64,000 nt of DNA from Amphiscolops sp. MND2022 (lineage: Eukaryota). Below are positions 1-58,629 of this stretch, in pieces (within the stretch, counting starts at the first letter, position 1; every line of letters begins with the position of its first letter). Position numbers and translations under genes: made by a program. The notes below the pieces were generated by a model. That model did no database searches, had not been told where the DNA came from, and saw nothing but the letters and a program-made list of their open reading frames with translations. The stretch covers positions 5,766,001 to 5,830,000 of the forward strand of contig OZ076415.1 of NCBI GenBank assembly GCA_964187785.1, given 5' to 3'.

Positions 1-364
1 TGAACACTCTCCTGTCTACCCCACTGTCTTTTCAAGATGCCTTCAACAACCATTCCGTTCTCTAAAAAGTTCCCTTCGACTTCTCTTTTTCGTCGCTTGC
101 CATCAAAAATGATTTTCACAGCATCTGTCTCTCCCGGGTGGTCATTGTTGCAGAAGAGGTCACTGATTGTGAAAAGTACATTCTTGTCAAACATCATGAT
201 CATAGTCGGACTAATTCGCGGAGTACAGACTTTGCGAGCATTCGCAATAGACCCAGTTGTTTGGTCTAACTCCATCACCCAAATGCCAGGCACCGCAACA
301 TTGCTCTCGGACCACAAGTTCCTCACAGATTCCGTTCTTGACGAAGGCAGCTCCAAAAAGTTCC
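1..364 (-). CDS. Host gene exon 5: end of NIDO-4 + start of IPT/TIG-like domain; gene probably continues beyond the left edge
   Basis: Acceptor ttttttcAG|GG. Frame NFLELPSSRTESVRNLWSESNVAVPGIWVMELD...CTPRISPTMIMMF... has no stop down to base 1; possible phase-1 donor G|GTAGAC after base 20. Not in the ORF track (no start/stop pair). Confidence 0.7.
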
Positions 365-1029
365 CTGAAAAAAGTACTATGATGATTCTGCTAATTTTAG
401 ATTCAAGGAATCATTAAATCCAGTATACTTTTAGTACTCACTTAGTCCTCACTGTCTCATTCAGCGGCCAACTGGAAAACAATTGTAATAATTTTGCGTT
501 TTATTCCATGATTTATTTTGGCAGATGTTTGCGTCTTGGTCCACATGAGAAAACAAAATCTCTCTGACTTTATATGACGAAATTGCCTCTGCTTTTCAAC
601 TCAAAAAATATTGGTCGTTCCACAGAAATCAACAAACTTCGGTTAGTAGCTTACGAATTTGGGAAACCAATGCTTTTGTACAACTTTTCTGACGTTCTGC
701 ACATTCAAAACAGGTTTTGTTTGGTGTGAATTCTCAAGAATTCAATGACTATAAAATTATTCACAAAGAAGTTCAATTTTTTTTCAGTTGACACTGTTTT
801 GCATCTCATTGGGCGTTAAAATTACATTGTGGCTACAAAGCTGAAGGCTGCCTTTACAGAGTGTTCAGCGGGCGTTGTCTTGGTTTTTTGACTAGAAATG
901 ACTCAAGCTATGTTTTCGTGACTTTAAAATCAAAACATGCTAAGTAACAAGCACCACATATAACCTAACAGCATAACGTATCAAACGTAACATCAACTGT
1001 TCTTTGTTTAAATTAGACTACATTGACCG

Positions 1030-1237
1030 CTCGAAATGTTTGATGCCAATATTGAAAATGCATTACACATCATTGAAAGCTCCCGTTTAGGAGCAATATT
1101 GTCTCATCTGATGGGCAACAATTAGGCATCAAAAACCAAAAAATCGTGTCCCTAGAAACTCAAGTATCACAGTTGGAGATAGTGTTGAACGAATGTTACA
1201 TGTATTCTCTTCCAATGACTGCAATATTATTGAGAAC
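1030..1237 (+). mobile_element. Left part of an old LINE (ORF1 coiled coil) interrupted by element A
   Basis: KNQKIVSLETQVSQLE...EC..YS.NDC.IIEN continues across the TSD into PPK at 21330. Start approximate. Confidence 0.55.
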
Positions 1238-1513
1238 TGTACTGATCTACATTAATAACCAATAGTATTTCGATGTTTATAGAATATTCTAGAAAGTACA
1301 TTTATTTATATTGAATGATTGTAAAACTCTACTCCTTCAGAGAGAGAAAACTAATAATCAGTATTTGGTCGACTTCCTTTTTGAGCCACCTTTCAGACCT
1401 CCAAGATTTAATAGAGTCAGCTAGCTAGCATCGTTCTAATAACTTAGTTCTATACCATCTAGAATAAAGGTAACCACCACCATTGTAAAAATAGGACTCT
1501 TTAAAGCAGCACA
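1238..1513 (+). repeat. 5' LTR of element A (276 bp)
   Basis: TGTACTGA...GCAGCACA. Aligns to 21048-21325 with ~14 substitutions and one 2-bp indel by hand count (~95% identity). Confidence 0.95.
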
Positions 1514-2030
1514 ATTTGGTGCGACTTGTAAAATTCTTTCTTTCCTTCGCTGAATGCTTTCTCCTCTCTCATCAATACAACACCTACCACTTCTCTTTGA
1601 AATTCTTTTGGATTGCAGTGAAATTTTACTAGATTTCCTTGAAAGTCTAGTCTGCAACGTTCTGAATTTCCGTTCTGAATCATTGGTAGACAAAACTTTT
1701 CTCCATTTCCAAAAAAAAACAAAACTTTCTTCAATTCTGGTTTATCACCTTTTTCTATAAACGTTGACACGGTTCTTCTTCTGTTATTCTTGTCTTGCCG
1801 GTTTATCACGTTTTCTAACACGTTGACATGGTACATTTTCAGACTGATTTATCCACAGTGACACAGTTCTGTTCTCCATACTGATTTATCACAGCTATAC
1901 GGAAGCTTGTTGAAACAGTTCTGTCCGGTTTATCAAGGTTTTCCAACACCTTTGACAAGGCAATAAATTCTTCAACCCTGCTTTCTTGAACGTCAGGTGG
2001 ACTCCTGGTGTAATAGTTGACTGAGTGCAC
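1436..2030 (-). pseudogene. Degenerate antisense ORF in the 5' leader of element A, with an internal peptide repeat
   Basis: Three overlapping minus-strand ORFs (2030-1839, 1836-1501, 1693-1436); repeated VLEN..DKP..RTVST unit. Confidence 0.3.
1514..1530 (+). promoter_or_regulatory. Primer binding site of element A (cognate tRNA uncertain; His or Phe are candidates)
   Basis: ATTTGGTGCGACTTG immediately after the LTR; TGG is complementary to tRNA CCA. Same junction GCAGCACA-ATTTG(G)TGC occurs at ~39594-39609. Confidence 0.6.
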
Positions 2031-2960
2031 GCTAGACTCACCTCACCTAAAAGCACATACGTTTCAAGATCAACTTCGTGTTGGCAGAAAACCTTGATTT
2101 TCTATTCTTTCGTTTTGGATCCATTTTCTAATGAAAAATTTTAAAAAATTACTTTCTGAATTAGATTCGAAAAACCATAAAAAGCAACCAAGTCTTTCAT
2201 TACCTCTTTAGTACCATCATCTGTCGACAAAATTTTCAACCCACTCAAAAATTTTAACCTACCTTCACAAAACATTTAATTTAACAAAACCACACATAAA
2301 ATTTTAAGACAACTCCTTTACCCTAAAATCTAAAATAAGACATGCAAATGAAACAGACACTGTAAATGTAGTTTTTAACTTTCAGGCACCCACAATTCCT
2401 ATCCCCTCCCGTAAGACTTAGACAATCAGACCCTACCTAGCTTTTGGCTTGCGTAATCTGATTCTAAGGCTGAATAAACGCCTTCGTTAAGTTTAAACGA
2501 CATTAAAAAGAATCTAGAGGACACCGAACTACGTTCGAATCTTCGAAATTCTCAGGAAGTAAAAGTAAAAGTAAAACACACAAAAGATCAAATTTTGATC
2601 TTGATCAGTATTGATCCGACTTTGGATAGTGGACGTTGATTGTTCAGAGATCCGCTCCCTTGGTCCTAAAACACACAACCCACTTAAAATTAAAATTCTC
2701 TGAGCCTTTCTGGACGTGTCAGTAACCTTATGTTAGACACCTTAATTAAAGTCCAGCTCTAAAATACAACTCTTACTGGATGTGTCAGTGGCCTTATGTC
2801 AGACACTTTAATTTAATCCAGACTTAATTCAGAACTCAGATTCTGTTAGCAACCCTTTGAGGTTGAATACAGATTCTATTGCACCCGCTTCTTTCTTCTC
2901 TATCCCTAGCAATACCAACACTTCAGACAATTTCATAAATATTTCATATTATGATCATAT

Positions 2961-4152
2961 ATGAACTCAAACACACATAACCAAATTTCTGACAATGCAT
3001 CTCTTTCTACTCCTTCAATACAACCTTCTATACGTCTAGTTCTACATCTACCTAGTACAACCTATCACTCTACAACCGTAGATTTTGAAACACTAAGTCG
3101 GCGATACGCACAATACTTTTTCTATCTTTTAGACCAACAACGACATCACCCAAGATCACCAACTTATAATTTCAAAACGAAAATATAACTTTTAACAATT
3201 TAACACACAACGAATTGAATCCAGACGGCATATTCTGTGTGAAAAACTTACCACAATAACACTTATCACCACGTATACATTTTCTGTTTTATTCCTATTT
3301 TGCATCCTGCTAGAAAAGATACTTACAATAATATATACTCTCTAACATGAAACCCTTAATAACAAAGATACACACAATAATAAATTATCTTTACCATGGC
3401 ATCCTCCATATCTTCCCTCTTCCCCTTCATCTTTTCAGATACCTTATATAAAAAATGCAAAACTAGTAAAACTCGAAATAAAACCATTTTTACATAACAT
3501 TTTTTACAATTAAACTAAACCACTTTCATTTGAAAATGAACCCTATACACTTGAAACAATTCTTCTTATTAGAGAACATTTGGATCTATATCTCTTCTAT
3601 ATTAGACACAGATCCACAACTGCCTCTACAGAATATTCATCTTTCCCAATTACTTTTCCTCAACAAGAAACCTCCTCAATTAGAACATATAGAAGAACAA
3701 TCAACCCAATCAATCTCCAAATTCCTATTCAAGAAGTTTTCTATGCTTTCCTAAATGAAGTAAATGATTTCAACTTAAGCCCAAAATGTAGCCCAAGTGC
3801 ACTTGAAGAACTTGACCAATATATACACAAGTTCGAAGTAGAAGATATAGAAAGACTAGTTTCTACTCAAAATAACCCTCATCATTGGTTACAAACAGAT
3901 ATAATAAAAACACAAAATTTCCTATATCATTGTTTCAAAGATATAACATTAAATGAACAAACAATATCTCAAACTAAACTGATATCTTTATTTCTTAGAA
4001 AATATTTCAGATTTAATTATCAACTAATATGGTCAAAACAAGATCAACTTGCTTTCGCAGCATTCCATAATCATTTTACAGCTCATGAATGTTTACCATT
4101 CATCATAAATAAACAAAATGAACATCCTTACGTTTTCAACCAGATACAATAA
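2961..4152 (+). pseudogene. Extra ORF upstream of gag (ORF0) of element A, fragmented, unknown function
   Basis: ORF pieces 2961-3188 and 3580-4152. Motif ISLFLRKYFRFNYQLIW matches INSFKLRKISR*NYQLIL in element B (~41200-41270, minus strand). Confidence 0.55.
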
Positions 4153-4163
4153 CAAATCAAACC

Positions 4164-6500
4164 ATGGATTTCATATCTTTTGATCCTTGTTTAATTACAA
4201 AAAACAATCTTCACGATGATAAGAGACCTTATCGTTATGAACAGAATATTCAAGAACAACAAAATCTATTTAACAACAATGACAATTACGATGAAAACGA
4301 CAATAATAATGAAGAATATATGCTTGAAAACCAAAATGAAAATCGTATTGAAGATATGGCCCTCAAAATAAATGAAAACAATGCAAGTGAGTATACCACT
4401 CCAGAATGTTTAATCACCTACAAGGACTCTTCTAATAGTACATGAAATGTAACTCGATCCATATATGATCCTCCATCACTTCCCTCTGTTTTTAAACATC
4501 CAAATAAAACAAATCAACCAGAAACTAATCGTAATAATAACCAACAAACTTCTAGTCAACACTATGATCCATTTAATTACTCCTCTTTTCCACCATCTAA
4601 TACAAATATTCAAACAAACAATCAGAATGTTTCTCAAAATAACAAAAACAATAATACTAATTTAATGACACAACACCCATACGCACATTTACTACAAACA
4701 AATCCTTCACAACGTAACTTTCCTTCACAAAATCAAAGAACATCCTATTCAAACATTGTACAACCTTCTCAAAGAAGATCCCAAAATCCTCCACTTTTAC
4801 ATATATCTACTGACCCTCTATATCAAATGAACCAACATACAACTTATAATCCTACTACTATTTCACCACCCGTAAACATGGTACAATCTGTAGTTCCTCC
4901 ACCTCAGTATATGGCAATACAACAAGATACAATCATAAAAACTTCAGCTTCAATACCAGAACCTTTGAAACCTTTTGATGGTTTAGACCATTATTACATT
5001 CCAGAAGAATATTTAAAACAAGTTGAAGCAAGACTGACCTTTGCCATAGGTGAAGAACCTCAAAGTATTCCTATTAATTTTAGGTCATGGCATAATAGAC
5101 GCATGGCATATATACTATGTTCTTTAATTGGAACAGGTCTTGATTGATACACTAATCTCCATATATCATATGAACAACATTGGAATTCATTCCTACAACT
5201 GTTTAAAAATCAATTTTCATCTCAAAAAACAGCTGATTACGCACAAGTAGAAGCTATGTCACTCATGAAAAAGGAAAATGAAACAGTACGCCAATTTGCC
5301 CTCAGAGTACAACAATTAGTTAAAAAGGATGGTGCAATGGAAATGCAGCTACCATAAATCTTGAAAACAATGAAATTCTTACGAAAGGATTACCTAAAAA
5401 ATTGAACGATTTTGCTCACAAAAGACAAGTTAAACGTGTATCAACATTACTCGAACCATCAATACCATTCCACACACTTGTTCGACATGTTGATTCTGAA
5501 GATATCGCTAATGAAAAAGTAAGAACAAATGACCTAGCTTGAGAAATAAACAAAGTATCAATTGAAGATGATACTAACAACAAAGAATCAGAACATGACC
5601 GAATAATGATTACTCAATCTGGAGACCCGAAAAACAAAAGCAAACCGACCTATGAAAAACATTGTTCTTATTGTCATAAAAATAATCATGGTGTTTCAAA
5701 TTGTTATCAAAAACAACGCGATGACGAATATCGAAAATATAAAAACCAGAGATCAAGAACTCCTCAACAATCCTTTGTACAATACTTTCGTAGTAAACCC
5801 AGTAATTCACGAGAAAATCGAAACAAAAATAAAAATGATTATTCTTCTAAAGATAACGACCGTAATAGATATAATCAAAACAACTACTCCTATTACAATG
5901 ACCGATAGAGAAATAAGGACAGATACCGAAGCAACAGTAGAGATTATTCACGAAAACGAACTTTCACGAAGGAAGAACTTCAAATACATCAATTGCGACA
6001 CAAACATTTGCCACCCCAAATCGATTTCCCTATCATGAAAGATAACCAACTCAAACCCGTACACTATTTAGAAAAACATGACGAAATCAAATATAATAAA
6101 AAATGATTGCCACCCAATTATCCACAAAGAGATTATTCACAAAATAATTATCGATCTAGTTCTCGACAAAGATATTACAATAGATCTCCACGTCCATACC
6201 CATCTAGATCCCGATATGACAATCATTATCAAAGAAGAACTCCATCTAGATCTCCATATAGATCACCATACAGAAACAACTCCAATTATAGATACAAGTC
6301 TCGATCAAGATATAGATCTCGTTCTCAATCACAAGGAAACTCCTTTAGACGATACAATTACCCGTATAGATTTCCATCCAGACCAAGAGATTACAGATCA
6401 AGATCTAGAACACCCTCACAAAACAGACAACAAAATAGAATAAATCAAGTAGATGTTAAATCTACCAACGAGAAAGATAGTACTAAATTTGAAACTCATA
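4164..6500 (+). pseudogene. gag: gag of element A (N/Q-rich N-terminus, capsid, CCHC knuckle, Arg/Ser-rich tail), disrupted
   Basis: KPFDGLDH..PEEYLKQVEAR capsid-type motif, zinc knuckle CSYCHKNNHGVSNC (CX2CX4HX4C), RS-dipeptide region 6107-6440. Confidence 0.85.
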
Positions 6501-6501
6501 T

Positions 6502-9500
6502 ATGCCAAACAACGAAATTGCAAATGCAATTACTCCTTATAGTTGGTTTTATTCACTATATGTACATGCTTCTGAAGGAAAAGACAACATATTACCTTCA
6601 AAATTAGAAATCCTATTCCTCTTAGATACTGGAGCTTCCATATCAGTTTTAAACTCACCAACATTTCATGTAATTGAAAAACAATTAAATCTCAATGTAC
6701 CAAAACATATTGAAAACAAAAGAGCAAAAACTCTTACAGTTGCCAATCAGACTGAAATACCGATAATACATTACGTTTCAATGACTTGTGTTACTGAAGT
6801 AAATCATCAAAATCGATTTTCAACATCGAATTTGCAGTGGCAAATATTAAATACGACATCCTTGGAGCACCTTTCGTCAAGGAAAATATTCAAAATATGG
6901 ACTTTCAACAAAGTATTATGACTTATAAAGAACAACATCCAAAACGCCCTAAAAACACATTTTTCGACATTTACAGAGAAGGACTACCCATACTTTTCAT
7001 ACATTTATACTATCAAACATAAAGAACCAAATCATTTCATACCAAGATCAGGAAGGACTATACATTTCCCAATCAAAAAATATCTTAACTTGCACTTTGA
7101 ACTGGAAGATAACACTAAAATTTATCCATTAAAGCCATATACATACTTCTTACAAAAATATAAAGATAATTTTCACTTCTTAGACATGATAGTCAACGCC
7201 AAAAGCAAAGACTCCTGCTCAACATTAATTCCAAATTTTACATCTCATCCAGCTACACTACCACGAGGAAATATTGGATATATAGAGATTCCTATTACTC
7301 AAACAACAGCTCCTCATTATAGAGTTCATGATGTAAACTCGCTTATTCATTCAGTAATACATGCCTATCATCCTGATACTACCATTCCAATCAGACAAAA
7401 TGAATACACAGATATGAATTTATGTACTCGAGTAATCCCACAGTCATTATTAGAAATCAATAAAATAGAAATAAATGATAAAACACTTCAATTACCCATA
7501 CCTTCTATCACGGGAAATCTTCGTCCTTCAGATAAAATTAGTAAAGATTTTCCTTCACTACCATATACTACAGAAAATCAGCAATTTACAAAAAAGTTCA
7601 ACTTCGAATATTCAGTTTGAATGATTCTGGATATGTAAAACTTTCAATATCCTTGTTAACGACCAAAATTGTTACGCTAAACACCGAAATGACGTAAGAA
7701 AAATTTCTATTCCATTCAGCGTTCGAATTAAAGGAAATTGTAAACTTCAACACAAAAACCCTCTAAAGTACCAATTCATTACAGAGATAGATTAAATAAA
7801 CTTTTAGTAGAACTTGAAAAATACAATATAATAAAACAAATTGGCTCTACGTCAGATGAAAAACACACTAAGTGAACAACATTTTTAAAACCCTTAATCA
7901 TTATCCCCGAAGGAGACGCAATAAAAGTCCTAGTTGCTAGACATTTAAACTCAAACACTAATCAAGAACTGGAATCTTGGCCCATCGAACCTTTAGCCCT
8001 CAATTGGCTAGAGCTAATGAAAAATACAAATCAACTGTTGATTTAATGTATGCATACGCTCATACCCCATTAGACGAAGAAATAATCAAACTTACAGGAT
8101 TTTCATCCGGAGATAAATTGAATGCCTTTATCCGTGGATTCTATGGATTAAAAGGACTCCCAAATTTTTTCACAAAACAAATGTCAACTTTCTTTCCATC
8201 ACTTATAGACAAACGTTCTGCGTTAGTATATATTGATGTTATATTACTATTAGCAGACGGAAAACAGGAAATGTTTGAACTTATCAAAGAATTTTAAAAA
8301 AAGTAACAAAAGAAAATCTCAAACTTGCATCTGAAAAATTAATTTTACATGTTACTTAAAGTAAAATTCCTTGGACATGAATTAGGGAACAACACAATTA
8401 GACCAATCCCATCAAAAATTGAAGCCATCAAAGAATCCCATCACCAAAAGAAAAGAAAGATGTTATGCAATTTCTAGGCAGTAAACTTTTATTCAAAATA
8501 CGTTGAAAAACTGCATATAAATTTCAAACCATTATACACTTTATTACATGATGTTGCTAAATTTCAATGGACACCCGAATTAGAAAAAAAATTTTCAAGA
8601 CGTTAAAACGCAATGACAGCCGAAACTGAATTAACCATACCCAAGAGACCATTAACTATGAGAGTTATTTCTTACAATCCAAGAATCCTTGAAACACAAG
8701 AACAAAAACTTTCAACATTCGACAGAGAACACCTCGCAAAAGTTTATGCATTACAAATATATGATTTTCTCATTATTGGATCTCCTCATCCTATATACAT
8801 CTTCACAGATCACAAACCTTTGCTGCACTGTTTTGCAAAAAAGGGAAGCCTTGGTCCAAGATTTTATAGAGCACAAACGCAACTAACAAATTTTTCCAAA
8901 CCAAAAACCATTTATACTCCTGGGAAAAACCTAACTGTTGCAGATATGCTTTCAAGAACTTTCACGAAAGAAAAACTTCAAATACATCAATTGCGACACA
9001 AACATTTGCAACCCCAAATCGATTTCTCTATCATGAAATATATCCAACTCAAACTACACTATTTAGTAAAGCATGAAGAAATCAATATATTCAAAAAAAT
9101 GATTGCCACCCAATTCTCGCTGACTATGGCGAAGACCAATTTTCCATTCGTATAAACAACAAAGGAGAAGACATTCATATGAAACCGTTAGATTCCTGTT
9201 CCTTTCAAGCCATTGTTCCAGTTGAATCCAAATACAAGAGACCTACAAAGAATCAAGCGAAATCACTTTTACAGCAATCAACTATCCTCAATGACACTGA
9301 TATTCTTAGTGATGAAGATGAACCAAATCAATCACAAAATACGAAGAATCAAAACACTAACACATTGCAAGAACAAACACTAGCAATACAGTATCCCACT
9401 AAATCTGATTACTGTAATCAACAAGTTCCATTTTTTGATCCATTCTTCTTTAAATACAAAAGATATTTTCATTTTTTCTTCCTACATGGACATTCAGGAA

Positions 9501-12273
9501 TTAAATCAATCAATTTCATTTTATATTATATTTAAAGAAAAGGATGTCGATATTCATTCACGACTGTATTGAATGTCAACAAAACAAACACATTAATTAA
9601 AAAATTCAAACTGCAACGATACAAACATTTTAAGAAAATGCTTCGTATTTCAATTATCGAATATCAATGTATACAAAAGGATCTATAAATCCACCATTAA
9701 AACAAAACTCATATATTCATGTGATAGTAGACGCTTTTAGTCACTTTGTAGTAACAGTACCTATTAAACAAAATACTGCTCAAAACGCTGTCAATTCCCT
9801 ATTACATCATTGGATTGTCAAATTTGGACCTCCCGTATATTTAGTTACAGACCGTGGTTCAGAATACATTAATTCTGAACTTGCAAACCTTTGTACCACA
9901 ATGGGAATCAGGCATTCACCAAGAACTCCTTAGGCACCATTAACAAATGGTTTAGTTGAGAACCAAAATAAAAACCTTGGAACCCATCTCAGACTTTTTC
10001 TACATAACACACCAGAAAACTGGTCTACCCAAGTCCATATGTACGCTTATGCACATAATTCACAACCACTTTCGGAATTGAATCTTTCACCATATGAAAT
10101 TGAATTTCATACTATACCAAGAATCCCAATCAACTTTGAACTCAATCTTCAAGGAGATACTTATAGAAATTGTACCTCTCAATACTTTCAGGACTAACCA
10201 CTTCATACACATTATGAAAAATCAAATTTAAACCCTTTCTTCCATAAGATCTTATTGAAACCATTTCCACAATGCATTTTGGCTACTGAAACTGGTATGA
10301 TACAAATATATCACACAGTCTATGAAAACACAAAAAGAAAAATTAATTCATTTGCTTTTTTTCAACAAAACATACAACAATCCAAGAACCTTAGACTTTG
10401 GTACATTTGTACTAAAAAGAAATTTTCTCCGTGTTCATTATTCAGATAAATTGAAACCTCTCAGAACTGGACCATTTAAAAACATCAACAAACTTTTAGA
10501 TAATACATATGGAATTGTAAATCAAGATGGTTACACTTCTCATATTCATAGAAACCACTTAGCTCCTTATTATCCAAAAGAACCAATCATTTTCCCCTTT
10601 ATACAACAATATAATCTACATTCAAATGATGATGATATTGATAATAATGACTCGAATGTAATTGACCCAATAAAGCATTTTAATTCTTTTTCCGATGAAG
10701 AACAATCAGTTGAAGACGAAGACCACACATTCACAAATTCCAATACAGAAACGGATATACCATCGACAATTGACTTTCAACTAGAATCATTTAACCAATA
10801 CTCCCCATTTCCGTGCCGAAAAAAACTAATAATACCAGAAAATGATATCACCCTCACCTTTATCAACCAGAAACAATTCATCATCTAGTTCAAACCATTC
10901 ATTCCAAACACTACCTGAAAATACCGCATGTCTAAATTCAGATACAGACATACTGGACTCCTCATCCTCAAACCATAGCCCATCTGCTCCATACTCTCCT
11001 GATAGAGCAACAGTAACGCCCAATAGTACACCAATACTTCAAACTCAAACATCAGTAATAACAACTCAACCACAAAATATCATAACAACTCAACCACAAT
11101 CCACTCTACAAAATTTGTCATTTTTAGGTACAAATTCACCAACAAGTGACTCTTGTGATGAATCACTCACAACCCATAACACTGTACAAGATACTTCAAG
11201 TATTCTAAACAGACCCCTCTTCCACCGATTCCTACTACTCGTACTCTTCATATTCCTTATCCTAGCTCAGTTCTTCAATACATTAAGTCTTGTCCACATA
11301 AAATACCAACTGCAACAAAAACATTAAGAAAAACTTCTATACCAACACTACCTAAAAACTCTGTTCCACCATCAACAAGTCAAACCCCAATAAAAACTAT
11401 ACCAGAAAACACAGCTAGCTCACCATCTGAACTAAGTTCATTTACATTTTCTCAATTATACCCAAGACTAGAACGCCTAATATCAACCACTGCATCTTCC
11501 TTAACAGACTTATATTATAAAGATAAAAACTCTGATTCGATTGTAAGTACCAGAGTACCAAGACATAGTTATAGCCTCAGATCCCAATCACGAAGTCTTT
11601 CTCACGCATTACAAACTTCAACTAGTTCTAGTACAAACTCAAGACTAGTTAGGCAACAAGCACAACCCAGATCAGAAACTCCTTCTCTTTCCTCATCTAA
11701 CCCCACAACACCATCTTCTCTATCACTACCATTTCAAGTCACATCAGGATTTGAATCTGCATCTCTTCTTTCAGAAGATTCTCAAACTATATCAGATAGT
11801 GCCGCAAACTTTTCCAAGTTTATTCACCTAGTTCAATACCATCTGATTCGTCCATACAATTGCCGGAATGTTTTCTAGAAGAACATTCGAGACCTCCTAC
11901 ACCAGACCCACAAGAATACCCTATTCGTGTTAACTCAAAGCTTATTCGTACTCTTAACGAAGATCCTCGATATACTGTACTCCCTGCTAGAGTTATAAAC
12001 AATAGTTCTCTCTCAAACCCAAGAAAACAAAGAGAACTACGAAGATTACAAGAAGATCAATTAGTATTGAAGTTCGAAGTTGAAGTTACATTCAACTCCT
12101 TAAAACCCCATCCATTTTCCCTTTCAACAAGAATAGTACATAAAACAACTCCCTCACCATTTTTAGTCACATCAGTATCTTATCTTTGTGACGCAGAATT
12201 ACAAGAAATTAGAACAGGTCATTTAAACTTTTTTAATCCCTACTCAGGACTTAACTATAGAACTATATTTTAA
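6502..12273 (+). pseudogene. pol: pol of element A: protease, dUTPase-like linker, RT, RNase H, integrase, long Ser/Thr tail; many stops and frameshifts
   Basis: LLDTGAS (PR); LKGLPNFF and VYIDV (degenerate YIDD); TDHKPL and NLTVADMLSR (RH, with its N-terminal DAS motif apparently deleted near 8640); HGHSG...CIEC zinc motif, VIVDAFS, VTDRGSE, GLVE (DDE); KLKPLRTGPF (GPY/F). Confidence 0.9.
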
Positions 12274-12275
12274 CT

Positions 12276-14504: not shown

Positions 14505-14659
14505 TGACTCCCCTTATATACCTCCTAAACATACAAGCAAGAATTCAACCCTTCAATCACCAATAAATACAAAATGTAATAACTCTACCGGAGAGCCTCG
14601 CTAAAGTCTTTATAAAAGTTAACTCCTCCTAACTGAAAAAAGTGATAACCAAATAACCT

Positions 14660-17480: not shown

Positions 17481-17880
17481 AAGCTCAAAATTCAAAAAAT
17501 TGACAACAAAAAATTCCACTATTCAACTTTCATTCTACCCAAAAAATTCTCAATTGGACAGTTGCCTATCTCAACTCAACCTGAAACAACTTCACTTGGA
17601 ACTTCATACTCCATTTGGAAAAATTCTTCGCGAATAACAAATTACAGAAGTCTCTATTCCTGGAATAGATGTCACTGTGATTGTTGATGTTTTGATCCAC
17701 AATACCCAACAGTATTCCAATATTGTAAGTACAATTTAAACTTCTACTTTCTAAAAAACCTAAAACGAAAAGAACAAAAATTACATAAAAAACTAACTCC
17801 CTCATTAGTTTAAACTTAATCTTATCATTTGCTAAAAACAATTACTATTTTAGCACTCCAAAATCACGCAAGTTAAAATA

Positions 17881-47127: not shown

Positions 47128-47213
47128 AAATCTATGCCAAATTCCCCTTTACCTTCACTCCATGTACTCCTCCCAATAAAAGTCCTCCGCCGCATCCACC
47201 TCTAACTACCAAC

Positions 47214-48891: not shown

Positions 48892-50319
48892 CCAACCTTC
48901 CATCTCTATACTAGACTCCTACCATTTTTAAAATTCCGCATCCTTCAAGATTGCAATGATGATCATTATGCTGCTTCTGCATCAAACCAACTTTAACAAC
49001 TCCCTTTTGGCAAGGTCGAACGCTTCGGTTTCTCCCACTTTAATTCGTATACTTAAAACCAACTCAACACTGCGCCATTACTGTCCCAATTGATTTGATA
49101 CATCTTTATCCGTAAGGAAAATGCACTATCCAACGTATAAACTCTTCCTAGAACAAACGCACCCCAGCAATTTGATTTTTCAGCTCCACAAAATCACCTA
49201 GCCTTTCTCCTATCACGCACACTATTAGGTAACCTACCTCCATACTATTGAAACGTCAATTCATTCATTCTTCCTACTCGAATCTCTACTCATGTTAATA
49301 ACATTTTTGCAAAGGTTAAAAAAATAGAGGATACCCTCTTGATGACCACCCTCGCTCTCTCTGTACCTCTTTAAAACCTCATCACTACTCTATCGCCCAC
49401 TAAAATTCACCAATGCAAAATTTTCCTTTTTCATACTTGAAAACAATACAAGTGTTCTGCTAAAACCAAGTACTGTAAAAACTATTAACGCCCTGCCCGA
49501 ATTACAATCCAATAACTTTAACTTATTTGAAGCTTCTCAACTCCCATTTCGAATCCCTCTACTCTTGTACAAAGTCCTGGTTCGTTATCATTCGTCCTCC
49601 AAACAGTAAAAGCTAACGTCTGTGATAGCGCCTTCTCCTATCCTGCTGATAAATCTGTTACAAAAGTCATTTCGCTACTGTGACCTAATATTGGAATTGA
49701 CCACCCTAACACTGATCCGTTTCCAACTTTGACTCACATTTTCGAGTTAACTCCTCAAAGTTTTTTTCAACTCCATTCAAAACGAAATGCAAATACACAT
49801 CATTTCAACTCTGCAGCACATAAAAGGTCTTCCCGAGAAACCTTTCTTTTCGCTGAAATACATCACAATACCTCCAATAAATCAATCTCTTCTCACAATT
49901 TGGAGGCTTTCTCAACCAAAATATGATTTTTTTTCAAGTAAAACTCCTCCTAACATCTCAATTTAATGTCTTTTCTAGAATGAATTTGAAAATAAAATTC
50001 AAGACAATTCTATTCTTTAAATTTCTATACTCTTTAAAATACTGTACAAAAATCTCATCTTTCGAAATTCAAAAACTAATTCGAAGAACCTTCAATTGCC
50101 CCCAGGTGGAGCTGGTTCTGTAAGACAACGTATTTTCCAATCTGTATTGTATAAGCAAAAACTTGCCAATTGTATTGATGGTTTAAGCAATAATGAAAAC
50201 AAAAAACGTTTGGATTCTCTCTCTCCAAACAGAGAAATCAACGATCTATCAAACATTCCTCAACTTTAATTGAACAAATCAACAAAAGTGAATGGTAACT
50301 CACTCTCAAATGGTCTCAA

Positions 50320-52735
50320 AGAGATATTTCGACCAAAGAATGTGGTGGAGGAGTAATGTTGATATTTCCGTCAAGTCTGAATCCTAAAGTGCGAAATGAT
50401 CTGGATTACATGAACAAGAAAAAGTTTGAACGTCTTTGGATAGAATGCAGTGTGAACAATAATTCTGCCAACAAGCAAAAGCAACTCATGAATGTTTCTT
50501 ACAACCCGAACAAAAGTCGATATCATCAATTCCTAGAAGAATTGTCTGTCGGCGTAGATCATGCAATTGTTGAAAATAAACCTTTGACAATTATGGGTGA
50601 CTACAATATTAATTATCTCAACATAAGGGAAAAACGACATTTGGAAACAGTAACTCATCCATATGGCCTGATATTTAGCAACACTGATCAACCTACGAGA
50701 ATAAAGGGTACATCAAAAACATTAGTTAAATATATCATAACGGATCACAGCAATGCTGCATGTTTTACACCTATAGTTATCGACACCCCTCTCCGTACCA
50801 TCGGCAAAAAGCCTATTGATCATTTAGCCACGTCTGTGATAACTAACATTGAAATGATGGAATCAACCAATGTTTTTAGAAAAACGATATTTGATAAGAA
50901 AACCTATAATAAAGAACTAATCCAATATTATGTTCAAAATTGCGATTGGGAGTACTTCTATGGACGAAGTTGTGCAGAAGGACTGTTCTCAATATTCTCA
51001 AATTTCATTGAAAACTCTTTAAACACATTTCATTGAAAACGGTCTTCATGCGAAACGCTAAAAGTAACTTAACATTACATCAGAAATGGGTTACGGAAAA
51101 GACTAAACAACATTACAAACAAATACATCAAAGTATGAATCCTTCTGACGCAAAATATGAATTATTCCATAGCAATTTTATTGAGCGTTTGAACGCTGAT
51201 CGCAATGATTCTCTAACAAAAGTTTTGGCTGATCTATCCAATGATTGAGAAAAATGGAATTTTATAAATGAAGCCAGAAAATCACTGAAAACCAAAACAA
51301 AAATTTCATCTCTGAAAAATGTTTTCGGCGAAACTGTATTAGATCAAACGAAAATTGCAAATCTTCTAAACTATAGATTGTCCAAATTGATTGACTACTT
51401 AGGTGGAATAAAAACGTTCAGTGAGGAACTTATTGATGGTGCAATCAGGAATAAAACCAAACTGCAGTTTATTCCTATTACACCTGTTGAATGTAAGCAA
51501 ATAGTGAGACAATTTAAATCTAACAAACCGCTCGGACCATCAAATAATCCTGCTTGGGCGCTCAAAAATTGTCTCAATATTATAGCTGAAACTCTTACCT
51601 ATTTATTAAACGCATTTTTAGAAGAAGGAAGGTTCCCGAATCATCTTAAGAGAGCAGATGTTGTACCAATACACACAAACGGTGACACCGAAGAACCAAA
51701 CAATTTTAGACCAATCTCAATCACATCGACAATTTCAAAATTTTTTGAAAAGGTAATTCGTAATCAAATTTTTGAATATTTTAATAAACATAACCATTTA
51801 AGTCCTATCCAGTTTGGAATTCGTGCAAAACTCTCAACATTTGATGGCCTTTTGTATGCCACTGAAACTATCAGATCAGATATTACCAACAATAAAATGG
51901 AAGAGGCCGCCTTCCTCGATCTATCAAAAGTTTTTGACCCATGAAATACTTTTGGAAAACCTTAAATGATATCATTTCGACTGTACTGCGATTGCCCTAA
52001 TTAAAAGCTATTTGACTAAACGAACTCAAAAAGTAAATCTTCAAAATACGTCATCAGATTGGATTAGCCTTATCAAGGTGTTCCACAGCGTACCGTATGT
52101 AAAATAATACAATATGCAGACGATATTTTTTTCTTGCAGACAATTTTTCAATACTGCTTAACAACGACTTGAAAATATTATTGCCAAATTAGTTGAATAT
52201 TTCAAAAATCGTAGACTTAATCTCAATGAAGATAAAACCGAATTCATTGTCTTCTGCAAAAATTCCCAGAACAAATAATCAAAAACTCTCAAATTACAAG
52301 TGAAAAATCACTCAACAAGTCTTAGTACTTTTGTAAAGTATCTTAGAGTTTACTTAGACCAAAATCTAACTTACGAAAAGGAAGTAAAACAGTCTTGAAG
52401 AAAATGGCCTTTGGTATTAAAACAATCTATGCAGTGAAACAATTCTTGCCGCAAAAAATTGTCTATTACTTCTTAATGCTCTAGTTTTTAGTCATCTTCA
52501 TTATCCAGCAATATTGGTTCAAATCATTTCACAAAATCTCTTACCAACACTTGAAAAACAATTGAGTTGGGGTGTAAAAGCCTGTTTTAATCGTCAGAAA
52601 CAGGCCTCATCTAGTGATTTGAAATTTAAACAATTTATTTCCAATAAGAATTTTTCTTGACTATAAATAATGTTTTAACTTCTGAAAATATCAAAATAAC
52701 CTACTATCAGCCTTCAGTGTTCATTTCTCAAATAA
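50320..52735 (+). mobile_element. Degraded CR1/L2-group LINE, same family as 14660-17480
   Basis: GGGVML, LWIEC, VSYNPNK, MGDYNINYL, DH (endonuclease); KPLGPSNNP, QFG.R, FLDLSK, QYADD (RT). Confidence 0.85.
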
Positions 52736-55450
52736 AATAGCGAAAAAAAGGAACACCTGGAACATAGAAAAATTGCTGGAGAGATTACCGCTTCAATTAA
52801 TTTTATAATTATTGCATTAGTTTTGTTTTTATTAAAAACCACACTGCCTTTTATAAGGAAACAAAATGATGTCTCTTTTATTTACGGAATTCAGTGCTTT
52901 TTCCAAACAAAATTGAAAAGAGGACCCTTTGAGATTTTTCAACATCCTTTCTGTCGCAAAGCTCCAAAAAATTGGAGGGGGTCCATTTTGGAAAAAAAAT
53001 TTTCCCCGAAGAAAAGTCTCGCAATGCCGAAAACAGTAAAAGGGGGCCGCCTTCCTCGATCTATCAAAAGTTTTTGACCCATGAAATTCTTTTGGAAAAA
53101 CTTGAATGATATCATTTCGACTGTACTGCGATTGCCCTAATTAAAAGCTATTTGACTAAACGAACTCAAAAAGTAAATCTTCAAAATACGTCATCAGATT
53201 GGATTAGCCTTATCAAGGTGTTCCACAGCGTACCGTTCTTGAACCTCTCTTATGCAACCTTGACGTTAACAGTATGCAGAAAATAATTGACGAAACATGT
53301 AAAATAATACAATATGCAGACGATATTTTTTTCTTGCAGACAATTTTTCAATACTGCTTAACAACGACTTGAAAATATTATTGCCAAATTAGTTGAATAT
53401 TTCAAAAATCGTAGACTTAATCTCAATGAAGATAAAACCGAATTCATTGTCTTCTGCAAAAATTCCCAGAACAAATTATCAAAAACTCTCAAATTACAAG
53501 TGAAAAATCACTCAACAAGTCTTAGTACTTTTGTAAAGTATCTTAAGAGTTTACTTAGACCAAAATCTAACTTACGAAAAGGAAGTAAAACATGTCTTGA
53601 AGAAAATGGCCTTTGGTATTAAAACAATCTATGCAGTGAAACAATTCTTGCCGCAAAAAATTGTCTATTACTTCTTAATGCTCTAGTTTTTAGTCATCTT
53701 CATTATCCAGCAATATTGGTTCAAATCATTTCACAAAATCTCTTACCAACACTTGAAAAACAATTGAGTTGGGGTGTAAAAGCCTGTTTTAATCGTCAGA
53801 AACAGGCCTCATCTAGTGATTTGAAATTTAAACAATTTATTTCCAATAAGAATTTTTCTTGACTATAAATAATGTTTTAACTTCTGAAAATATCAAAATA
53901 ACCTACTATCAGCCTTCAGTGTTCATTTCTCAAATAAAATAGCGAAAAAAAGGAACACCTGGAACATAGAAAAATTGCTGGAGAGATTACCGCTTCAATT
54001 AATTTTATAATTATTGCATTAGTTTTGTTTTTATTAAAAACCACACTGCCTTTTATAAGGAAACAAAATGATGTCTCTTTTATTTACGGAATTCAGTGCT
54101 TTTTCCAAACAAAATTGAAAAGAGGACCCTTTGAGATTTTTCAACATCCTTTCTGTCGCAAAGCTCCAAAAAATTGGAGGGGGTCCATTTTGGAAAAAAA
54201 ATTTTCCCCGAAGAAAAGTCTCGCAATGCCGAAAACAGTAAAAGGGGGCCGCCTTCCTCGATCTATCAAAAGTTTTTGACCCATGAAATTCTTTTGGAAA
54301 AACTTGAATGATATCATTTCGACTGTACTGCGATTGCCCTAATTAAAAGCTATTTGACTAAACGAACTCAAAAAGTAAATCTTCAAAATACGTCATCAGA
54401 TTGGATTAGCCTTATCAAGGTGTTCCACAGCGTACCGTTCTTGAACCTCTCTTATGCAACCTTGGCGTTAACAGTATGCAGAAAATAATTGACGAAACAT
54501 GTAAAATAATACAATATGCAGACGATATTTTTTTCTTGCAGACGATTTTTCAATACTGCTTAACAACGACTTGAAAATATTATTGCCAAATTAGTTGAAT
54601 ATTTCAAAAATCGTAGACTTAATCTCAATGAAGATAAAACCGAATTCATTGTCTTCTGCAAAAATTCCCAGAACAAATTATCAAAAACTCTCAAATTACA
54701 AGTGAAAAATCACTCAACAAGTCTTAGTACTTTTGTAAAGTATCTTAAGAGTTTACTTAGACCAAAATCTAACTTACGAAAAGGAAGTAAAACATGTCTT
54801 GAAGAAAATGGCCTTTGGTATTAAAACAATCTATGCAGTGAAACAATTCTTGCCGCAAAAAATTGTCTATTACTTCTTAATGCTCTAGTTTTTAGTCATC
54901 TTCATTATCCAGCAATATTGGTTCAAATCATTTCACAAAATCTCTTACCAACACTTGAAAAACAATTGAGTTGGGGTGTAAAAGCCTGTTTTAATCGTCA
55001 GAAACAGGCCTCATCTAGTGATTTGAAATTTAAACAATTTATTTCCAATAAGAATTTTTCTTGACTATAAATAATGTTTTAACTTCTGAAAATATCAAAA
55101 TAACCTACTATCAGCCTTCAGTGTTCATTTCTCAAATAAAATAGCGAAAAAAAGGAACACCTGGAACATAGAAAAATTGCTGGAGAGATTACCGCTTCAA
55201 TTAATTTTATAATTATTGCATTAGTTTTGTTTTTTATTAAAAACCACACTGCCTTTTATAAGGAAACAAAATGATGTCTCTTTTATCTACGGAATTCAGT
55301 GCTTTTTCCAAACAAAATTGAAAAGAGGACCCTTTGAGATTTTTCAACATCCTTTCTGTCGCAAAGCTCCAAAAAATTGGAGGGGGTCCATTTTGGAAAA
55401 AAAAATTTCCCCGAAGAAAAGTCTCGCAATGCCGAAAACAGTAAAAGGGG
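51905..55450 (+). repeat. Tandem triplication of a ~1.2-kb unit (LINE 3' half + Helentron-like fragment)
   Basis: Unit starts GGCCGCCTTCCTCG at 51905, 53045 and 54247; periods 1140 (unit 1 has a ~62-bp deletion) and 1202; units 2 and 3 differ at only a few bases. Confidence 0.95.
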
Positions 55451-55657
55451 GACCCTTTGGTCTGGTCCGGTATCAGATATTACGAATAAAACCTGTTTGG
55501 TTCAGTTGCCTGGGCCAACAGGGGCAATTTGAAACTTAGTAGAATTTTTCATAGAACTATTTTGATCACTTCAGGTGAATCGAAAAAAAAATTTTAAACA
55601 CTGACGGAAAGCCATAACTATAGTCGGCTATTTTCAGGAAAAGGCGCCGACTAAAAA
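55140..55657 (+). mobile_element. 3' portion of a Helentron/DINE-like element (its internal part is repeated in the triplication)
   Basis: GCCGAAAA..AAAGGGGGACCCTTTGGTC core shared with 34600-34645; end hairpin AGTCGGC...AGGCGCCGACTAAAAA. Start approximate. Confidence 0.6.
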
Positions 55658-55725
55658 TTGGAAAGCATCGACGAATCTTATCGAGGGATTAGCTGCTTAT
55701 AAAGCAATGCTAACAATCTACCTAC

Positions 55726-56740
55726 CTTTGAAGCGAATTTCTGTTAGAAAGGACACTTCTCCCCATTGTAGTTCACAGAAATCGTAGATGATAAAACAAC
55801 TCTCAGCACCACATGTAATTATGCACTGGAAGGTATTGAAGAGACTGGCATCATCGGTGGTTCCAATTTTGTACCAAGTCACCACGTATGCGAACTCAGC
55901 CAGGAACGAACGATCTCCTTGACTAATGAACGAATTGATAACATTCAAATCAGATTCTTCTCTCGTTTCCCTCTTGAGAACATTTCCTGCCAAGTTGACA
56001 TATTTAGTTGAGTTTTCACCGAGCAACAGTCGCGATATTTCATCGTCGACGGTGATATCCAAATTATGTAGGGGCGTTTTCATAATCTTTTCATTCCATT
56101 CAACTACAGCTGCTAACTTTTGATCGTCACTGATTCCATACGTACTGAGAAGAGGGAAACTTGAAGTTGGGTTCTCTCTACTGAGAATTTGTGAACAAAC
56201 GTCATTGAAATAACTCTCTGCTGAATAGAACTCAAGTGAGTAAAGGCAAGAATAGTCAAAAAACTCGATTGTAGTTTCATACCCATAATAATTTCTGTGA
56301 ATCAAAAGAGGAGCGATTACAATTGTATCCGATGAAAACGTGCCTGTTTCTAAGAGGTTGTAACTTGTTTCCTCTCGATGCGTGAAACTTAAATATCCAT
56401 CTTCGCATATCAAAGCGAAACCAGCAGATTTCCCCCAACACAGTCAATTTTCGTCCCAAAATTTTAGGTTGTGAACACTTGTTTCCTCTGGATATGTATT
56501 TGTCGCCGGACTGGGGTCCAAACCTGAGCAAGAACGGTTCATCTGGTTCGTATTCATTGAAAGCATGAACTGTTGTGTCACTGACATTAAAGATAACATT
56601 GTTATCTTCTCGTAGAATTTGACTGGTGCTGTCGTTTTGGTTCAGTTCATAAACCCACACGCCTTTTACCCCAATGTTGCTTTTCCTCATCAGAAGATCG
56701 GCTTCAAAATTCGTCGGCAAACACTGAATTGGTATTTCCT
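55726..56740 (-). CDS. Host gene exon 2: end of NIDO-1 + most of NIDO-2 (one apparent 1-nt insertion in G5 run 56432-56436)
   Basis: Acceptor ttgtttcAG|AG. Begins with the NIDO C-terminal motif LLMRKSNIGVKGVWVYEL, then PFLLRFGPQSGD, IAPL, KYVNLAGNV, YVVTWYK, NTFQCIITCG, FIIYD. Donor AAA G|GTAGGT (phase 1). Length 1015 = 3n+1; removing one G restores the frame. Confidence 0.8.
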
Positions 56741-57633
56741 CTGAAACAAATGCTTGATATTTTTTCTTCAAATTTCAACCTCGGAGGTTTTGCTGAAGAA
56801 GCCACTGCACAGATCAGTTTCTTTGATTGCTTTTTTTATCCCTCAATAATTAAGTACTTAACACGCAATTCATCAACACTTATTTTTCAATGTTTCAATA
56901 ATCACTTCGGGTTCCGGTGAATTTCAACTGTTGCAAATTTTTACACAGACCAATTTTAACTTCTACATATGAGACAAAAAACAAGAGTTCCTTGACGTGG
57001 CCAAAAAACTCAATACATGATAAAAACATTTTTTATGAGAACTTCTCCCTTAGGGAACAACTCCAAAATCATGCAAAAACGATACCATGAAAGATGAAAT
57101 CAAGCATTATGCCGTCCAGGTAAAGGTCTCAATTATTATAAAATTCTTAAGGCAACCATTATCTGAGATATTTGGCATAAAGGCATTGCTCCGTTGAAAC
57201 TAGTCAAGGTTTACTCTAGAATCAGCGTATCCAGAAACAGAGTCAACAAACACATATAAACTTACTGAAGAGTTTTGAAACAAAGTGACTAAAAACCTCA
57301 GAAGTGCAGTTATGCCAAAATCAATTTCGTCATTTTAGCTTCATTTCCCCTTAAGTGATCGGAAATGGAGAATCAATGCCAAAGCCAAAAGTTCTTTTGG
57401 GAAATCGAAAAATAAATGTTTTGGAGTCGTAGATTTTTCGAAAAATGTTTCAATTTTCCTATGCACAGAAGGTATATTCAACATTATCTCCATTGGAACA
57501 AAATAACTGTTCTTCAAAACAAACTTTTTGGTCATTTTTAACTACCGAGTTTGGATTTGAAATACTTGATTATCTAGTGAAAAATTTCTTCAATCGTCAA
57601 CGTACCCGCACCGAGATCAATTTGTATACTTAC

Positions 57634-58629
57634 TTCGATCGGTCATGAAGCCACAGTGTTGCTCTAAAAATTGGGCATTGACAAGTTGCCACCTTGACAA
57701 TCCAGTGGTCTCGAAATAGTTGAAAATTACGAAACACCTGCCAGAGATGTCGCCCTCTTCGCTGCACACAATAATCATCTGGAAGCTGACTGAACACTCG
57801 TAAAAATAATAGCCAGTGACCACTCCAGTTGACGAATCGCAGTGTCTGACCCGAATCTTATACCATGTAACAACGAGCGACCACTGACCGACAAAGTTTT
57901 CACTGTTTTCCATTGTCATCCTTTGTTCAAGATTTCCAAATCTTCACCGGAAGTGATCCGCCGTGAGAAAATATTGTCGGCCAAGTTCACATATTTGGTT
58001 GAGTTCTGTCCAAAAAACCTAAGCGCTACTTCGTCATCTTTGTGGATGATTGTCGCCAGATCACTCTTTGTCAAATCCCTTTCATGCAGTTCTTTGAATA
58101 TTTCCATTGGCTCCTCAGCAGCCGTGACCTTGTCCGGTCGGAAATCACGTGAAAAGTATTGATACAGAGTTCCAGCTGGGTGAAAATACTCTTCGTACAT
58201 TTCCATGCACCAAAACTGGTTTCCATAAAAGGAGTTTTCTTCAACCGAGTACAAACACCTGTAATCGAGAAAACGATTTTCAAGTCTGTGCAGAGCTAGA
58301 AAAGGTGCAACGATGGGATAGTCGATTGCCTGAAAGTCAGGAAAATCATTCCATTCCCAGTAGGTAGGAGTTTGCACAAACAGTTCACCTGGTAAATTGA
58401 ATTTGATCACGCCGTTCAAGCAAACGTAAGCTTTCTCAACTCTTGAGTTCCCAATTTTGAAACTCTGCTCCAAATCCATTGCCAGAGAACAACCCTCCCT
58501 GCTTGCGAAAGCATCCCCGTGTTTGGGGCCAAAGGGTAGCAGAAAAGGGTCGTCCATGTCGGGAATAGAAGCAGCATATCCACAAGTAACACACAAAAAA
58601 ATTGTCTGGAGGAATGAAAAAGTATGCAT
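57634..58629 (-). CDS. Host gene exon 1: signal peptide + NIDO-like domain 1 (one apparent 1-nt frameshift near 57920)
   Basis: ATG at 58629, hydrophobic leader MHTFSFLQTIFLCVTCGYA. NIDO-type motifs PFLLPFGPKHGD, AYVCLNGVIKF, IVAPF, WSLVVTWYK, SFQMII, CFVIFNY. Canonical donor CGA A|GTAAGT (phase 1). ORFs 57916-58629 and 57617-57919 join if 1 nt is added; exon length 996 is 1 short of 3n+1. Confidence 0.8.

What the first reader, a model, noticed from the sequence alone, without database searches (positions are those of the whole stretch)
1..58629. One >58-kb gene built from four tandem NIDO modules, each cut at the same phase-1 intron
Seen: the four scattered minus-strand ORFs are not separate genes. 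Only the first has Met + signal peptide; each later exon opens with the C-terminal NIDO motif (SN.G..G.W...L) that completes the previous exon. Junctions translate cleanly: TDR|K-EIPIQCLP, RFK|E-FRFAAPS, ELP|H-NVLPVNW, ENR|G-NFLELPS. Known: nidogen, alpha-tectorin, SNED1, MUC4 and insect Mesh carry a single NIDO domain. Inference: lineage-specific expansion by tandem exon duplication giving an unusual multi-NIDO surface or matrix protein.
Basis: partly seen in the sequence, partly recalled or inferred. Interest (0 to 1): 0.75.

Follow-up and report, generated by a model that had tools for sequence, protein, structure and literature searches.

The report
Four-NIDO Mesh/MUC4-like gene, frameshifted copy
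The scattered minus-strand reading frames are exons of one long gene for a secreted Mesh/MUC4/SUSD2-type protein with four tandem NIDO domains, but this copy has two frameshifts, and proteins with several NIDO domains are already in public databases.

Summary
Four homologous minus-strand exons (M1 to M4) and a fifth exon (E5) are joined by GT..AG introns, all in phase 1. Each intron cuts a NIDO domain at the same place, and only M1 has a Met and a signal peptide. The same five-exon order occurs in three other versions from one public sample. Exon dN/dS is about 0.3. An annotated acoel homologue has its intron in the same Gly codon and the same phase.

The N gap lies inside intron 4, within about 25 kb of inserted repeats. 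In two other versions that intron is about 750 bp, and its two ends match the window on either side of the insertion, so order and orientation across the gap hold.

Three corrections:
- The window's copy cannot make the roughly 1500-aa product. M1 has a 7-bp deletion and M2 an extra G, both private to this version. Its 99% sister allele has two different frameshifts. Two older copies are intact.
- The gene runs off the window. In another copy AMOP-like, VWD and MUC4-C8-like exons follow.
- Multi-NIDO proteins already exist: DEX-1 (2), a rotifer 2xNIDO-AMOP-VWD protein, and frog proteins with 3 to 15.

The module duplications are old, not recent.

The parts
57634..58629 (-). Exon M1. It holds the ATG (58629-58627), a signal-peptide-like start (MHTFSFLQTIFLCVTCGYA|AS) and the head of NIDO 1, and ends in phase 1 at a GTAAGT donor. 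It is broken by a 7-bp deletion at about 57924/57923, which brings a TGA into frame at 57918-57916.
   Evidence: The intact orthologous exon in copy B scores 37.6 bits on Pfam NIDO.
55726..56740 (-). Exon M2. It holds the tail of NIDO 1 (SNIGVKGVWVYEL), a linker and the head of NIDO 2, in phase 1-1. It is broken by one extra G in the run at 56436-56432.
   Evidence: (NIDO 34.5 bits)
36985..38076 (-). Exon M3. It holds the tail of NIDO 2, a linker and the head of NIDO 3: 1092 nt, phase 1-1, intact in the window. The 99% sister allele has a 32-bp deletion here.
26382..27488 (-). Exon M4. It holds the tail of NIDO 3, a linker and the head of NIDO 4: 1107 nt, phase 1-1, intact. Its weak GTTCCA donor is conserved in all four versions.
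   Evidence: (NIDO 37 bits)
1..364 (-). Exon E5, cut by the window edge. It holds the tail of NIDO 4 (SNVAVPGIWVMEL). What follows the tail is uncharacterised here and in copy B; only the matching exon of the more distant paralogue L002 gives a weak IPT/TIG hit (21.4 bits against a 20.9 cut-off). The open frame continues past position 1.
365..26381 (-). Intron 4 (26,017 nt as assembled). It is an ancestrally ~750-bp intron swollen by about 24.8 kb of retroelement sequence (951..25762). It contains the assembly gap at 23676-23875.
38077..55725 (-). Intron 2 (17,649 nt). It holds LINE fragments and a 1.2-kb unit repeated three times in tandem.
27489..36984 (-). Intron 3 (9,496 nt).
56741..57633 (-). 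Intron 1 (893 nt).

Best explanation
The window carries most of one minus-strand animal gene. The animal is probably an acoel, because the nearest annotated homologues come from Symsagittifera and Convolutriloba.

The gene encodes a secreted or membrane-anchored extracellular protein of the Mesh/MUC4/SUSD2 type. Its order is signal peptide, four tandem NIDO domains and then, beyond the window edge, AMOP-like, VWD and MUC4-C8-like parts.

Each NIDO domain is split by a phase-1 intron in a conserved Gly codon. Every internal exon therefore encodes the tail of one NIDO, a linker and the head of the next. The exons are symmetric (phase 1-1).

This layout is what an intragenic tandem duplication would produce if one breakpoint fell in exon 1, after the signal peptide, and the other in exon 2, after the NIDO tail. 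Repeats of that fused unit would then give four modules. This origin is inferred, not shown.

The particular copy in the window is disabled. A 7-bp deletion in M1 and a 1-bp insertion in M2 shift the frame, so translation from the ATG stops at codon 238. It is most likely a null allele or a young pseudogene of a duplicated locus whose older copies remain intact.
For: Shown:
- Splice sites, phase and junction translation.
- The NIDO profile is split across the junctions.
- There are exactly four modules.
- The same M1-M2-M3-M4-E5 order and conserved splice sites occur in three other versions from sample ERZ25074608: allele b (99% identical) and copies B and C.
- Copies B and C are open in all five exons.
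- Exon dN/dS is 0.27-0.37 at dS 0.1-0.25.
- The RefSeq homologue XP_063710766 of S. roscoffensis, mapped on L004, has its intron in the same Gly codon in phase 1.
- AMOP-like (below cut-off), VWD and C8-3_MUC4-like (below cut-off) exons lie downstream in copy B; in paralogue L002, VWD with weak TIG and sub-cut-off AMOP hits.
- The frameshifts are private to the window version. An independently named contig, ctg185644, is 100% identical to the window over 16 kb.
- Allele b has two other frameshifts, -1 in M1 and -32 in M3.

From literature: Mesh is NIDO, Ig-like E set, AMOP, vWD and sushi (10.1101/2020.11.10.376210).
Against: - There is no RNA evidence, so joint inclusion of all four modules in one mRNA is inferred only.
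- The extra G in M2 sits in a homopolymer and could be a read-consensus error.
- The window and ctg185644 may derive from the same reads, so their agreement is not fully independent.
- Whether versions B and C are paralogous loci or very divergent haplotypes is unresolved (all have about 100x coverage).
- E5 and its flank are closer to copy C than to copy B, unlike M1-M4. The left side of the gap could therefore belong to a converted or different haplotype.
- The AMOP hit is below Pfam's cut-off.
- No sushi or TM segment was sought or seen downstream.
Confidence: 0.8

Rival explanations
1. The gene in the window is intact and functional. The two frameshifts would then be consensus errors of the assembly.
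For: The M2 lesion is one extra G in a G run, which is a typical long-read error. Exon dN/dS is about 0.3 in comparisons that include the window.
Against: A 7-bp deletion outside any homopolymer is not a typical error. A second contig from the same sample reproduces both lesions exactly. The 99% allele carries two further, different frameshifts, one of 32 bp. Four lesions at dS 0.027, against none in copies B and C at dS 0.25, points to relaxed constraint at this locus.
Confidence: 0.12
2. The modules are alternative exons and are not all included. Because every internal exon is phase 1-1, skipping or mutually exclusive use of M2-M4 would give isoforms with 1 to 4 NIDO domains, and could bypass a broken internal exon.
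For: Symmetric phase 1-1 exons, with any head and tail able to pair across a junction. Annotated acoel homologues have a single module.
Against: The introns are 9 to 26 kb and the modules are only about 30% identical, unlike known mutually exclusive exon clusters. All modules are under purifying selection and are kept in the same order in every copy. Tandem inclusion of NIDO units is seen in database proteins of frog (RefSeq) and rotifer (GenBank). Skipping cannot rescue the M1 lesion.
Confidence: 0.15
3. The ORFs are separate single-NIDO genes or gene relics in a tandem array, each with its own promoter.
For: The exons are far apart and separated by retroelements.
Against: M2-M4 have no start codon or signal peptide. 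They begin at acceptor sites with the tail of a NIDO domain and end at donors in mid-domain. No E5-like or VWD exon follows M1-M3. Splice sites are conserved in all copies.
Confidence: 0.03

Closest known systems
Drosophila/Anopheles Mesh, vertebrate SUSD2 and the MUC4 C-terminal NIDO-AMOP-VWD unit
   Same: An extracellular protein with a signal peptide and NIDO followed by an (Ig-like/IPT) domain, AMOP and VWD. A MUC4-type C8-like stretch lies downstream in copy B (10.1101/2020.11.10.376210).
   Different: It has four NIDO domains rather than one. AMOP is only weakly matched. No sushi domain or TM segment is shown. The NIDO head carries an insert of about 110 aa, and Pfam scores are low (24-37 bits).
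Brachionus plicatilis 'sushi domain-containing 2-like' RNA04016.1 (P0051)
   Same: Tandem NIDO domains followed by AMOP, VWD and C8-3_MUC4.
   Different: It has two NIDO domains, not four. It is a distant sequence, and its NIDO domains match Pfam much better.
Acoel RefSeq homologues: Symsagittifera roscoffensis XP_063710766 and Convolutriloba macropyga XP_075250590 and others
   Same: These are the best annotated matches to the whole module. The architecture is NIDO, AMOP-like, VWD. The S. roscoffensis gene has a phase-1 intron in the same Gly codon.
   Different: They have a single NIDO module and are only about 28% identical.
Amphibian and fish multi-NIDO proteins (Rana temporaria XP_040182910, Hyperolius XP_068098422, Mixophyes XP_075046984, Xenopus mucin-4-like XP_041425685)
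   Same: They carry many NIDO domains in tandem: 15, 6, 5 and 3.
   Different: No AMOP or VWD was found in the Pfam scans. They have classical NIDO sequence and an unrelated lineage, so the expansion is probably independent.
C. elegans DEX-1
   Same: It has more than one nidogen domain in an apical extracellular-matrix protein (PMC11304992).
   Different: It has two NIDO domains plus EGF and TM, and no AMOP or VWD. It was not compared by sequence here.

Membership tests
NIDO domain (Pfam PF06119) | Match to the profile at or above the 25-bit gathering score | tested here: met
   M2 scores 34.5 bits and M4 37.0. M3 scores 24.0, just below the cut-off. M1 gives no hit in its broken pieces, but the intact copy-B M1 scores 37.6, copy-B M2 49.9 and copy-B M3 29.2.
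NIDO domain (Pfam PF06119) | Complete domain: the head (profile about 1-131) and the tail (about 154-185) are both present and adjacent | tested here: met
   The tail matches lie at the start of M2 and of E5, and of E5 in L002 and L010. The SN.G..G.W...L motif is present in M2, M3 and M4. In E5 the first G is an A. Head and tail are adjacent only after splicing, which was not observed directly.
Mesh / SUSD2 / MUC4-type NIDO-AMOP-VWD proteins | VWD domain downstream of NIDO in the same gene | tested here: met
   Not visible in the window because the gene is cut at position 1. In copy B the VWD scores 45.7 bits, 2 kb after E5. In paralogue L002 it scores 49.5 bits.
Mesh / SUSD2 / MUC4-type NIDO-AMOP-VWD proteins | AMOP domain between NIDO and VWD | tested here: inconclusive
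   The AMOP hits score 14-17.6 bits, below the 25-bit cut-off, in L002, L010 and the S. roscoffensis homologue. They are at the expected place.
Mesh / SUSD2 / MUC4-type NIDO-AMOP-VWD proteins | Sushi domain and a single-pass TM at the C-terminus | not tested
   The 3' end of the gene was not traced. By eye, the S. roscoffensis homologue ends in a hydrophobic TM-like stretch.
Functional protein-coding gene (as opposed to a pseudogene) | Uninterrupted reading frame from the ATG through all exons | tested here: not met
   The window version has frameshifts in M1 (-7) and M2 (+1), with a stop at codon 238. Copies B and C meet this feature.
Single transcription unit | Spliced reads that link the exons | not testable with these tools
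   No RNA data are available. Support is indirect: splice sites, phase, domain completion, conservation, and the homologue's gene model.

The most novel reading that the evidence does not exclude
This animal lineage, probably acoel, may have evolved a family of Mesh-like surface proteins in which symmetric phase 1-1 'NIDO tail + head' exons act as cassettes. Exon skipping would then give isoforms with one to four chimeric NIDO domains. It would also let alleles with a broken internal cassette stay functional.
Probability: 0.1. Interest if true: 0.5.

Novelty: new variant of a known kind. Interest (0 to 1): 0.3.

Why it matters
It is a clear example of how a domain split by an intron can be multiplied. 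A duplication with breakpoints in two neighbouring exons creates a fused, frame-neutral exon that can then be repeated.

It also adds a four-NIDO form to the NIDO-AMOP-VWD proteins (Mesh, SUSD2, MUC4), which act in epithelial barriers and junctions, in a poorly annotated animal lineage.

For annotation, the practical points are these. The scattered ORFs belong to one gene. The gene extends beyond the window. This haplotype should be flagged as frameshifted, and intact copies exist elsewhere in the same sample. No new biology is established.

Tried and rejected
- AlphaFold2 of the first 430 residues of the S. roscoffensis homologue, with an 8-row alignment, was meant to show whether the exon-2-encoded tail packs into the NIDO fold. 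It gave mean pLDDT 37.5 and is unusable. No fold search was run.
- A profile search of PDB sequences found no solved relative.
- Naming the organism: only the nearest annotated homologues (acoels) could be named.
- A relaxed tblastn for extra or degenerate modules in the introns found none.
- Tiny introns as an explanation of the two frame changes were rejected. The frames overlap with no residues to spare, and the other three versions show plain indels at those spots.
- The idea that the -7 and +1 lesions compensate was rejected. The sum restores the frame, but the stretch between them hits a stop at once.
- Whether versions B and C are alleles or paralogues was not settled. Flank comparison shows collinearity of the window with b and partly with B, and only around the exons with C.
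Full report
**Anatomy**

On the minus strand there are six long open pieces, not four. They form five exons.

| Exon | Window coordinates | Length (nt) |
|---|---|---|
| M1 | 58629-57634 | 996 |
| M2 | 56740-55726 | 1015 |
| M3 | 38076-36985 | 1092 |
| M4 | 27488-26382 | 1107 |
| E5 | 364 to the window edge | 364 in the window |

The introns are 893, 17,649, 9,496 and 26,017 nt.

Each has a pyrimidine-rich acceptor ending in TTTCAG.

The four modules align over their whole length at about 30% identity. A relaxed tblastn finds no further module in the introns.

Pfam NIDO matches profile positions about 45-131 near the end of M2, M3 and M4. It matches positions 154-185 at the very start of M2 and E5. 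Each intron therefore cuts a NIDO domain. Each internal exon encodes a NIDO tail, a linker of 20-30 aa, and the next NIDO head, which starts at the PF.LPFGPK.GD motif.

Only M1 starts with Met and a signal-like stretch, MHTFSFLQTIFLCVTCGYA|AS.

**The gap**

The 200 Ns at 23676-23875 lie in intron 4. They are about 2.5 kb past the M4 donor and 23 kb before the E5 acceptor, in non-coding sequence.

In two gap-free contigs that carry other versions of the gene, M4 and E5 are about 750 bp apart on one strand. Window 26400-25762 and window 951-1 match directly abutting stretches of that short intron: L010 11015-11232 and 11226-12158, and likewise in L001.

Everything between about 951 and 25762, the gap included, is therefore inserted repetitive DNA. 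It holds Ty3/gypsy-like and LINE ORFs, and a 254-nt direct repeat pair at 1238 and 21048.

Order and orientation across the gap fit the gene model. The length of the gap is unknown. Whether both sides come from the same haplotype is also not shown. E5 and its flank are closer to copy C (84%) than to copy B (76%), which is the reverse of M1-M4.

- M1 changes frame at about 57924/57923, and a TGA follows at 57918-57916.
- M2 changes frame at the G5 run 56436-56432.
- The frames overlap with no residues missing, so these are not introns.

**Four versions in one sample**

Protein searches led to ENA sample ERZ25074608, which holds four versions of the locus.

| Version | Contig | Relation to the window | Reading frame |
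|---|---|---|---|
| window | ctg185644 | 100% identical over 16,085 bp | M1 -7 bp, M2 +1 G |
| b | ctg185022 | 98.8-99.1% identical, collinear through introns and 10 kb upstream | M1 -1 bp, M3 -32 bp |
| B | ctg184934 | 88-93% identical, collinear through intron 2 | open in all five exons |
| C | ctg182520 | 82-93% identical, around the exons only | open in all five exons |

All four have the same M1-M2-M3-M4 order, followed by E5 in the window, B and C (E5 was not recovered for b), and conserved splice dinucleotides. In C the M3 acceptor has moved by one base, next to a 2-nt insertion, and the frame is kept.

Against the other three versions, the window's M1 lacks 7 bases and its M2 has one extra G. 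The lesions in b are different from those in the window.

So there are four independent frameshifts in the window/b pair, at dS 0.027. B and C show none at dS 0.25. This points to a recently disabled locus, or to null alleles. Assembly noise is a less likely cause. Only the extra G looks like a typical read error.

**Selection**

Nei-Gojobori dN/dS over about 1,500 codons is 0.27-0.37 for every pair. Each of the five exons taken alone gives 0.13-0.47 for comparisons with B or C. All four modules have therefore been coding sequence under purifying selection.

**The rest of the gene**

The E5 reading frame runs off the window.

- In copy B, E5 is followed by an exon with a weak AMOP match and a clear VWD match (45.7 bits). 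After that comes an exon with a weak C8-3_MUC4 match.
- A more distant paralogue (L002) shows, after its NIDO tail, a weak TIG/IPT hit (21.4 bits against a 20.9 cut-off), then a sub-cut-off AMOP match and a clear VWD.

This is the Mesh/SUSD2/MUC4 layout. Mesh is described as NIDO, Ig-like E set, AMOP, vWD, sushi and TM (10.1101/2020.11.10.376210).

**Relatives**

A profile of the module was searched against 1.84 billion representative proteins. It found many single-exon ORFs from unannotated ENA contigs. The best annotated whole-module matches are acoel proteins:

- Symsagittifera roscoffensis XP_063710766
- several Convolutriloba macropyga proteins

Each of these has one module followed by an AMOP-like region and VWD.

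Mapping the S. roscoffensis protein onto a 98% identical contig places its intron in the Gly codon of ..N|G|FKVELP.., in phase 1. The M4/E5 junction of the window..R|G|NFLELP.., splits the same codon in the same phase. An annotated gene model therefore shows this intron being used.

The window's organism is thus probably an acoel without annotation. That is an inference from best hits only.

**Is multi-NIDO unusual?**

| Protein | NIDO domains | Other domains | Source |
|---|---|---|---|
| Rana temporaria XP_040182910 | 15 | - | |
| Hyperolius riggenbachi XP_068098422 | 6 | - | |
| Mixophyes fleayi XP_075046984 | 5 | - | |
| Xenopus laevis mucin-4-like XP_041425685 | 3 | - | |
| Brachionus plicatilis RNA04016.1 | 2 | AMOP, VWD, C8-3_MUC4 | |
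| C. elegans DEX-1 | 2 | EGF-like domain; described as transmembrane | PMC11304992 |

Four NIDO domains in front of an AMOP-like region and a VWD is, as far as these searches show, a new count. It is not a new kind of protein.

**Origin (inferred)**

A single-module ancestor had two relevant exons: exon 1 with the signal peptide and NIDO head, and exon 2 with the NIDO tail and the rest. A tandem duplication with one breakpoint after the signal peptide and the other after the tail gives a fused tail+head exon, flanked by two copies of the phase-1 intron. Repeating that unit gives four modules.

A tree of 44 modules groups them by position. M1 falls with eight first-exon ORFs (support 100). M4 falls with six others (99). 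M3 falls with ten others (93). M2 stands alone. The duplications therefore predate the spread of the family and are not recent.

Several other contigs also carry internal-type exons that begin with a NIDO tail, and L002 is one of them. Other family members are therefore multi-module too.

**What remains open**

- No RNA evidence is available. Joint inclusion of all modules is inferred. Because all internal exons are phase 1-1, exon skipping is possible.
- Whether B and C are paralogous loci or extreme haplotypes is unresolved. All contigs have about 100x coverage.
- M4 is a mosaic between versions, which suggests gene conversion.
- A structure prediction meant to test domain completion failed, with pLDDT 37.5. 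No solved relative was found by sequence.

**Verdict**

This copy is frameshifted, the gene is truncated by the window, and the architecture is a variant of a known kind. Interest is modest.

Noticed in passing
window 951-25762 (LTR-like pair 1238-1491 and 21048-21301; ORFs 3580-11327 +; 14852-16999 +): About 24.8 kb of intron 4 is absent from copies B and C. It holds a block of about 20 kb bounded by 254-nt direct repeats (95% identical). Inside are Ty3/gypsy-like ORFs (RNase H hit) and a nested LINE ORF of 715 aa (RVT_1, E = 3e-41). All of these lie antisense to the gene.
   Followed up: partly
window 51905-55458: A 1.2-kb unit is repeated three times in tandem (98-100% identical) just downstream of the M2 donor in intron 2. 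Copy B (L003) has it once.
   Followed up: partly
window 26382-27488 versus L007, L010 and L001: Exon M4 is a mosaic. Allele b matches copy B in the middle third, while the window matches copy C in a nearby stretch. The window-b difference in M4 (31 substitutions) is far above the 1% seen elsewhere. This suggests gene conversion among the copies.
   Followed up: partly
L001 16056-16327: Copy C carries a second, partial copy of exon E5 about 4 kb downstream of the first. It is 92.6% identical to window 272-1, closer than the first copy (84%).
   Followed up: no
window 1-951 versus L010 and L001: E5 and the adjoining intron are nearer to copy C (84%) than to copy B (76%), the reverse of M1-M4. 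The sequence to the left of the assembly gap may have a different history or haplotype from the sequence to the right.
   Followed up: partly
L007 versus window 36479-35257: A 1.2-kb stretch of intron 3 in the window is absent from the 99% allele b. This is an insertion/deletion polymorphism.
   Followed up: no
window 62262-63299: A 186-nt tandem repeat of about 3 copies (85% matches) lies upstream of the gene, next to a reverse-transcriptase-like minus-strand ORF at 63786-63466.
   Followed up: no
window 40001-42000: There is a strong positive GC skew (+0.46) in a 2-kb stretch of intron 2. It was not examined.
   Followed up: no
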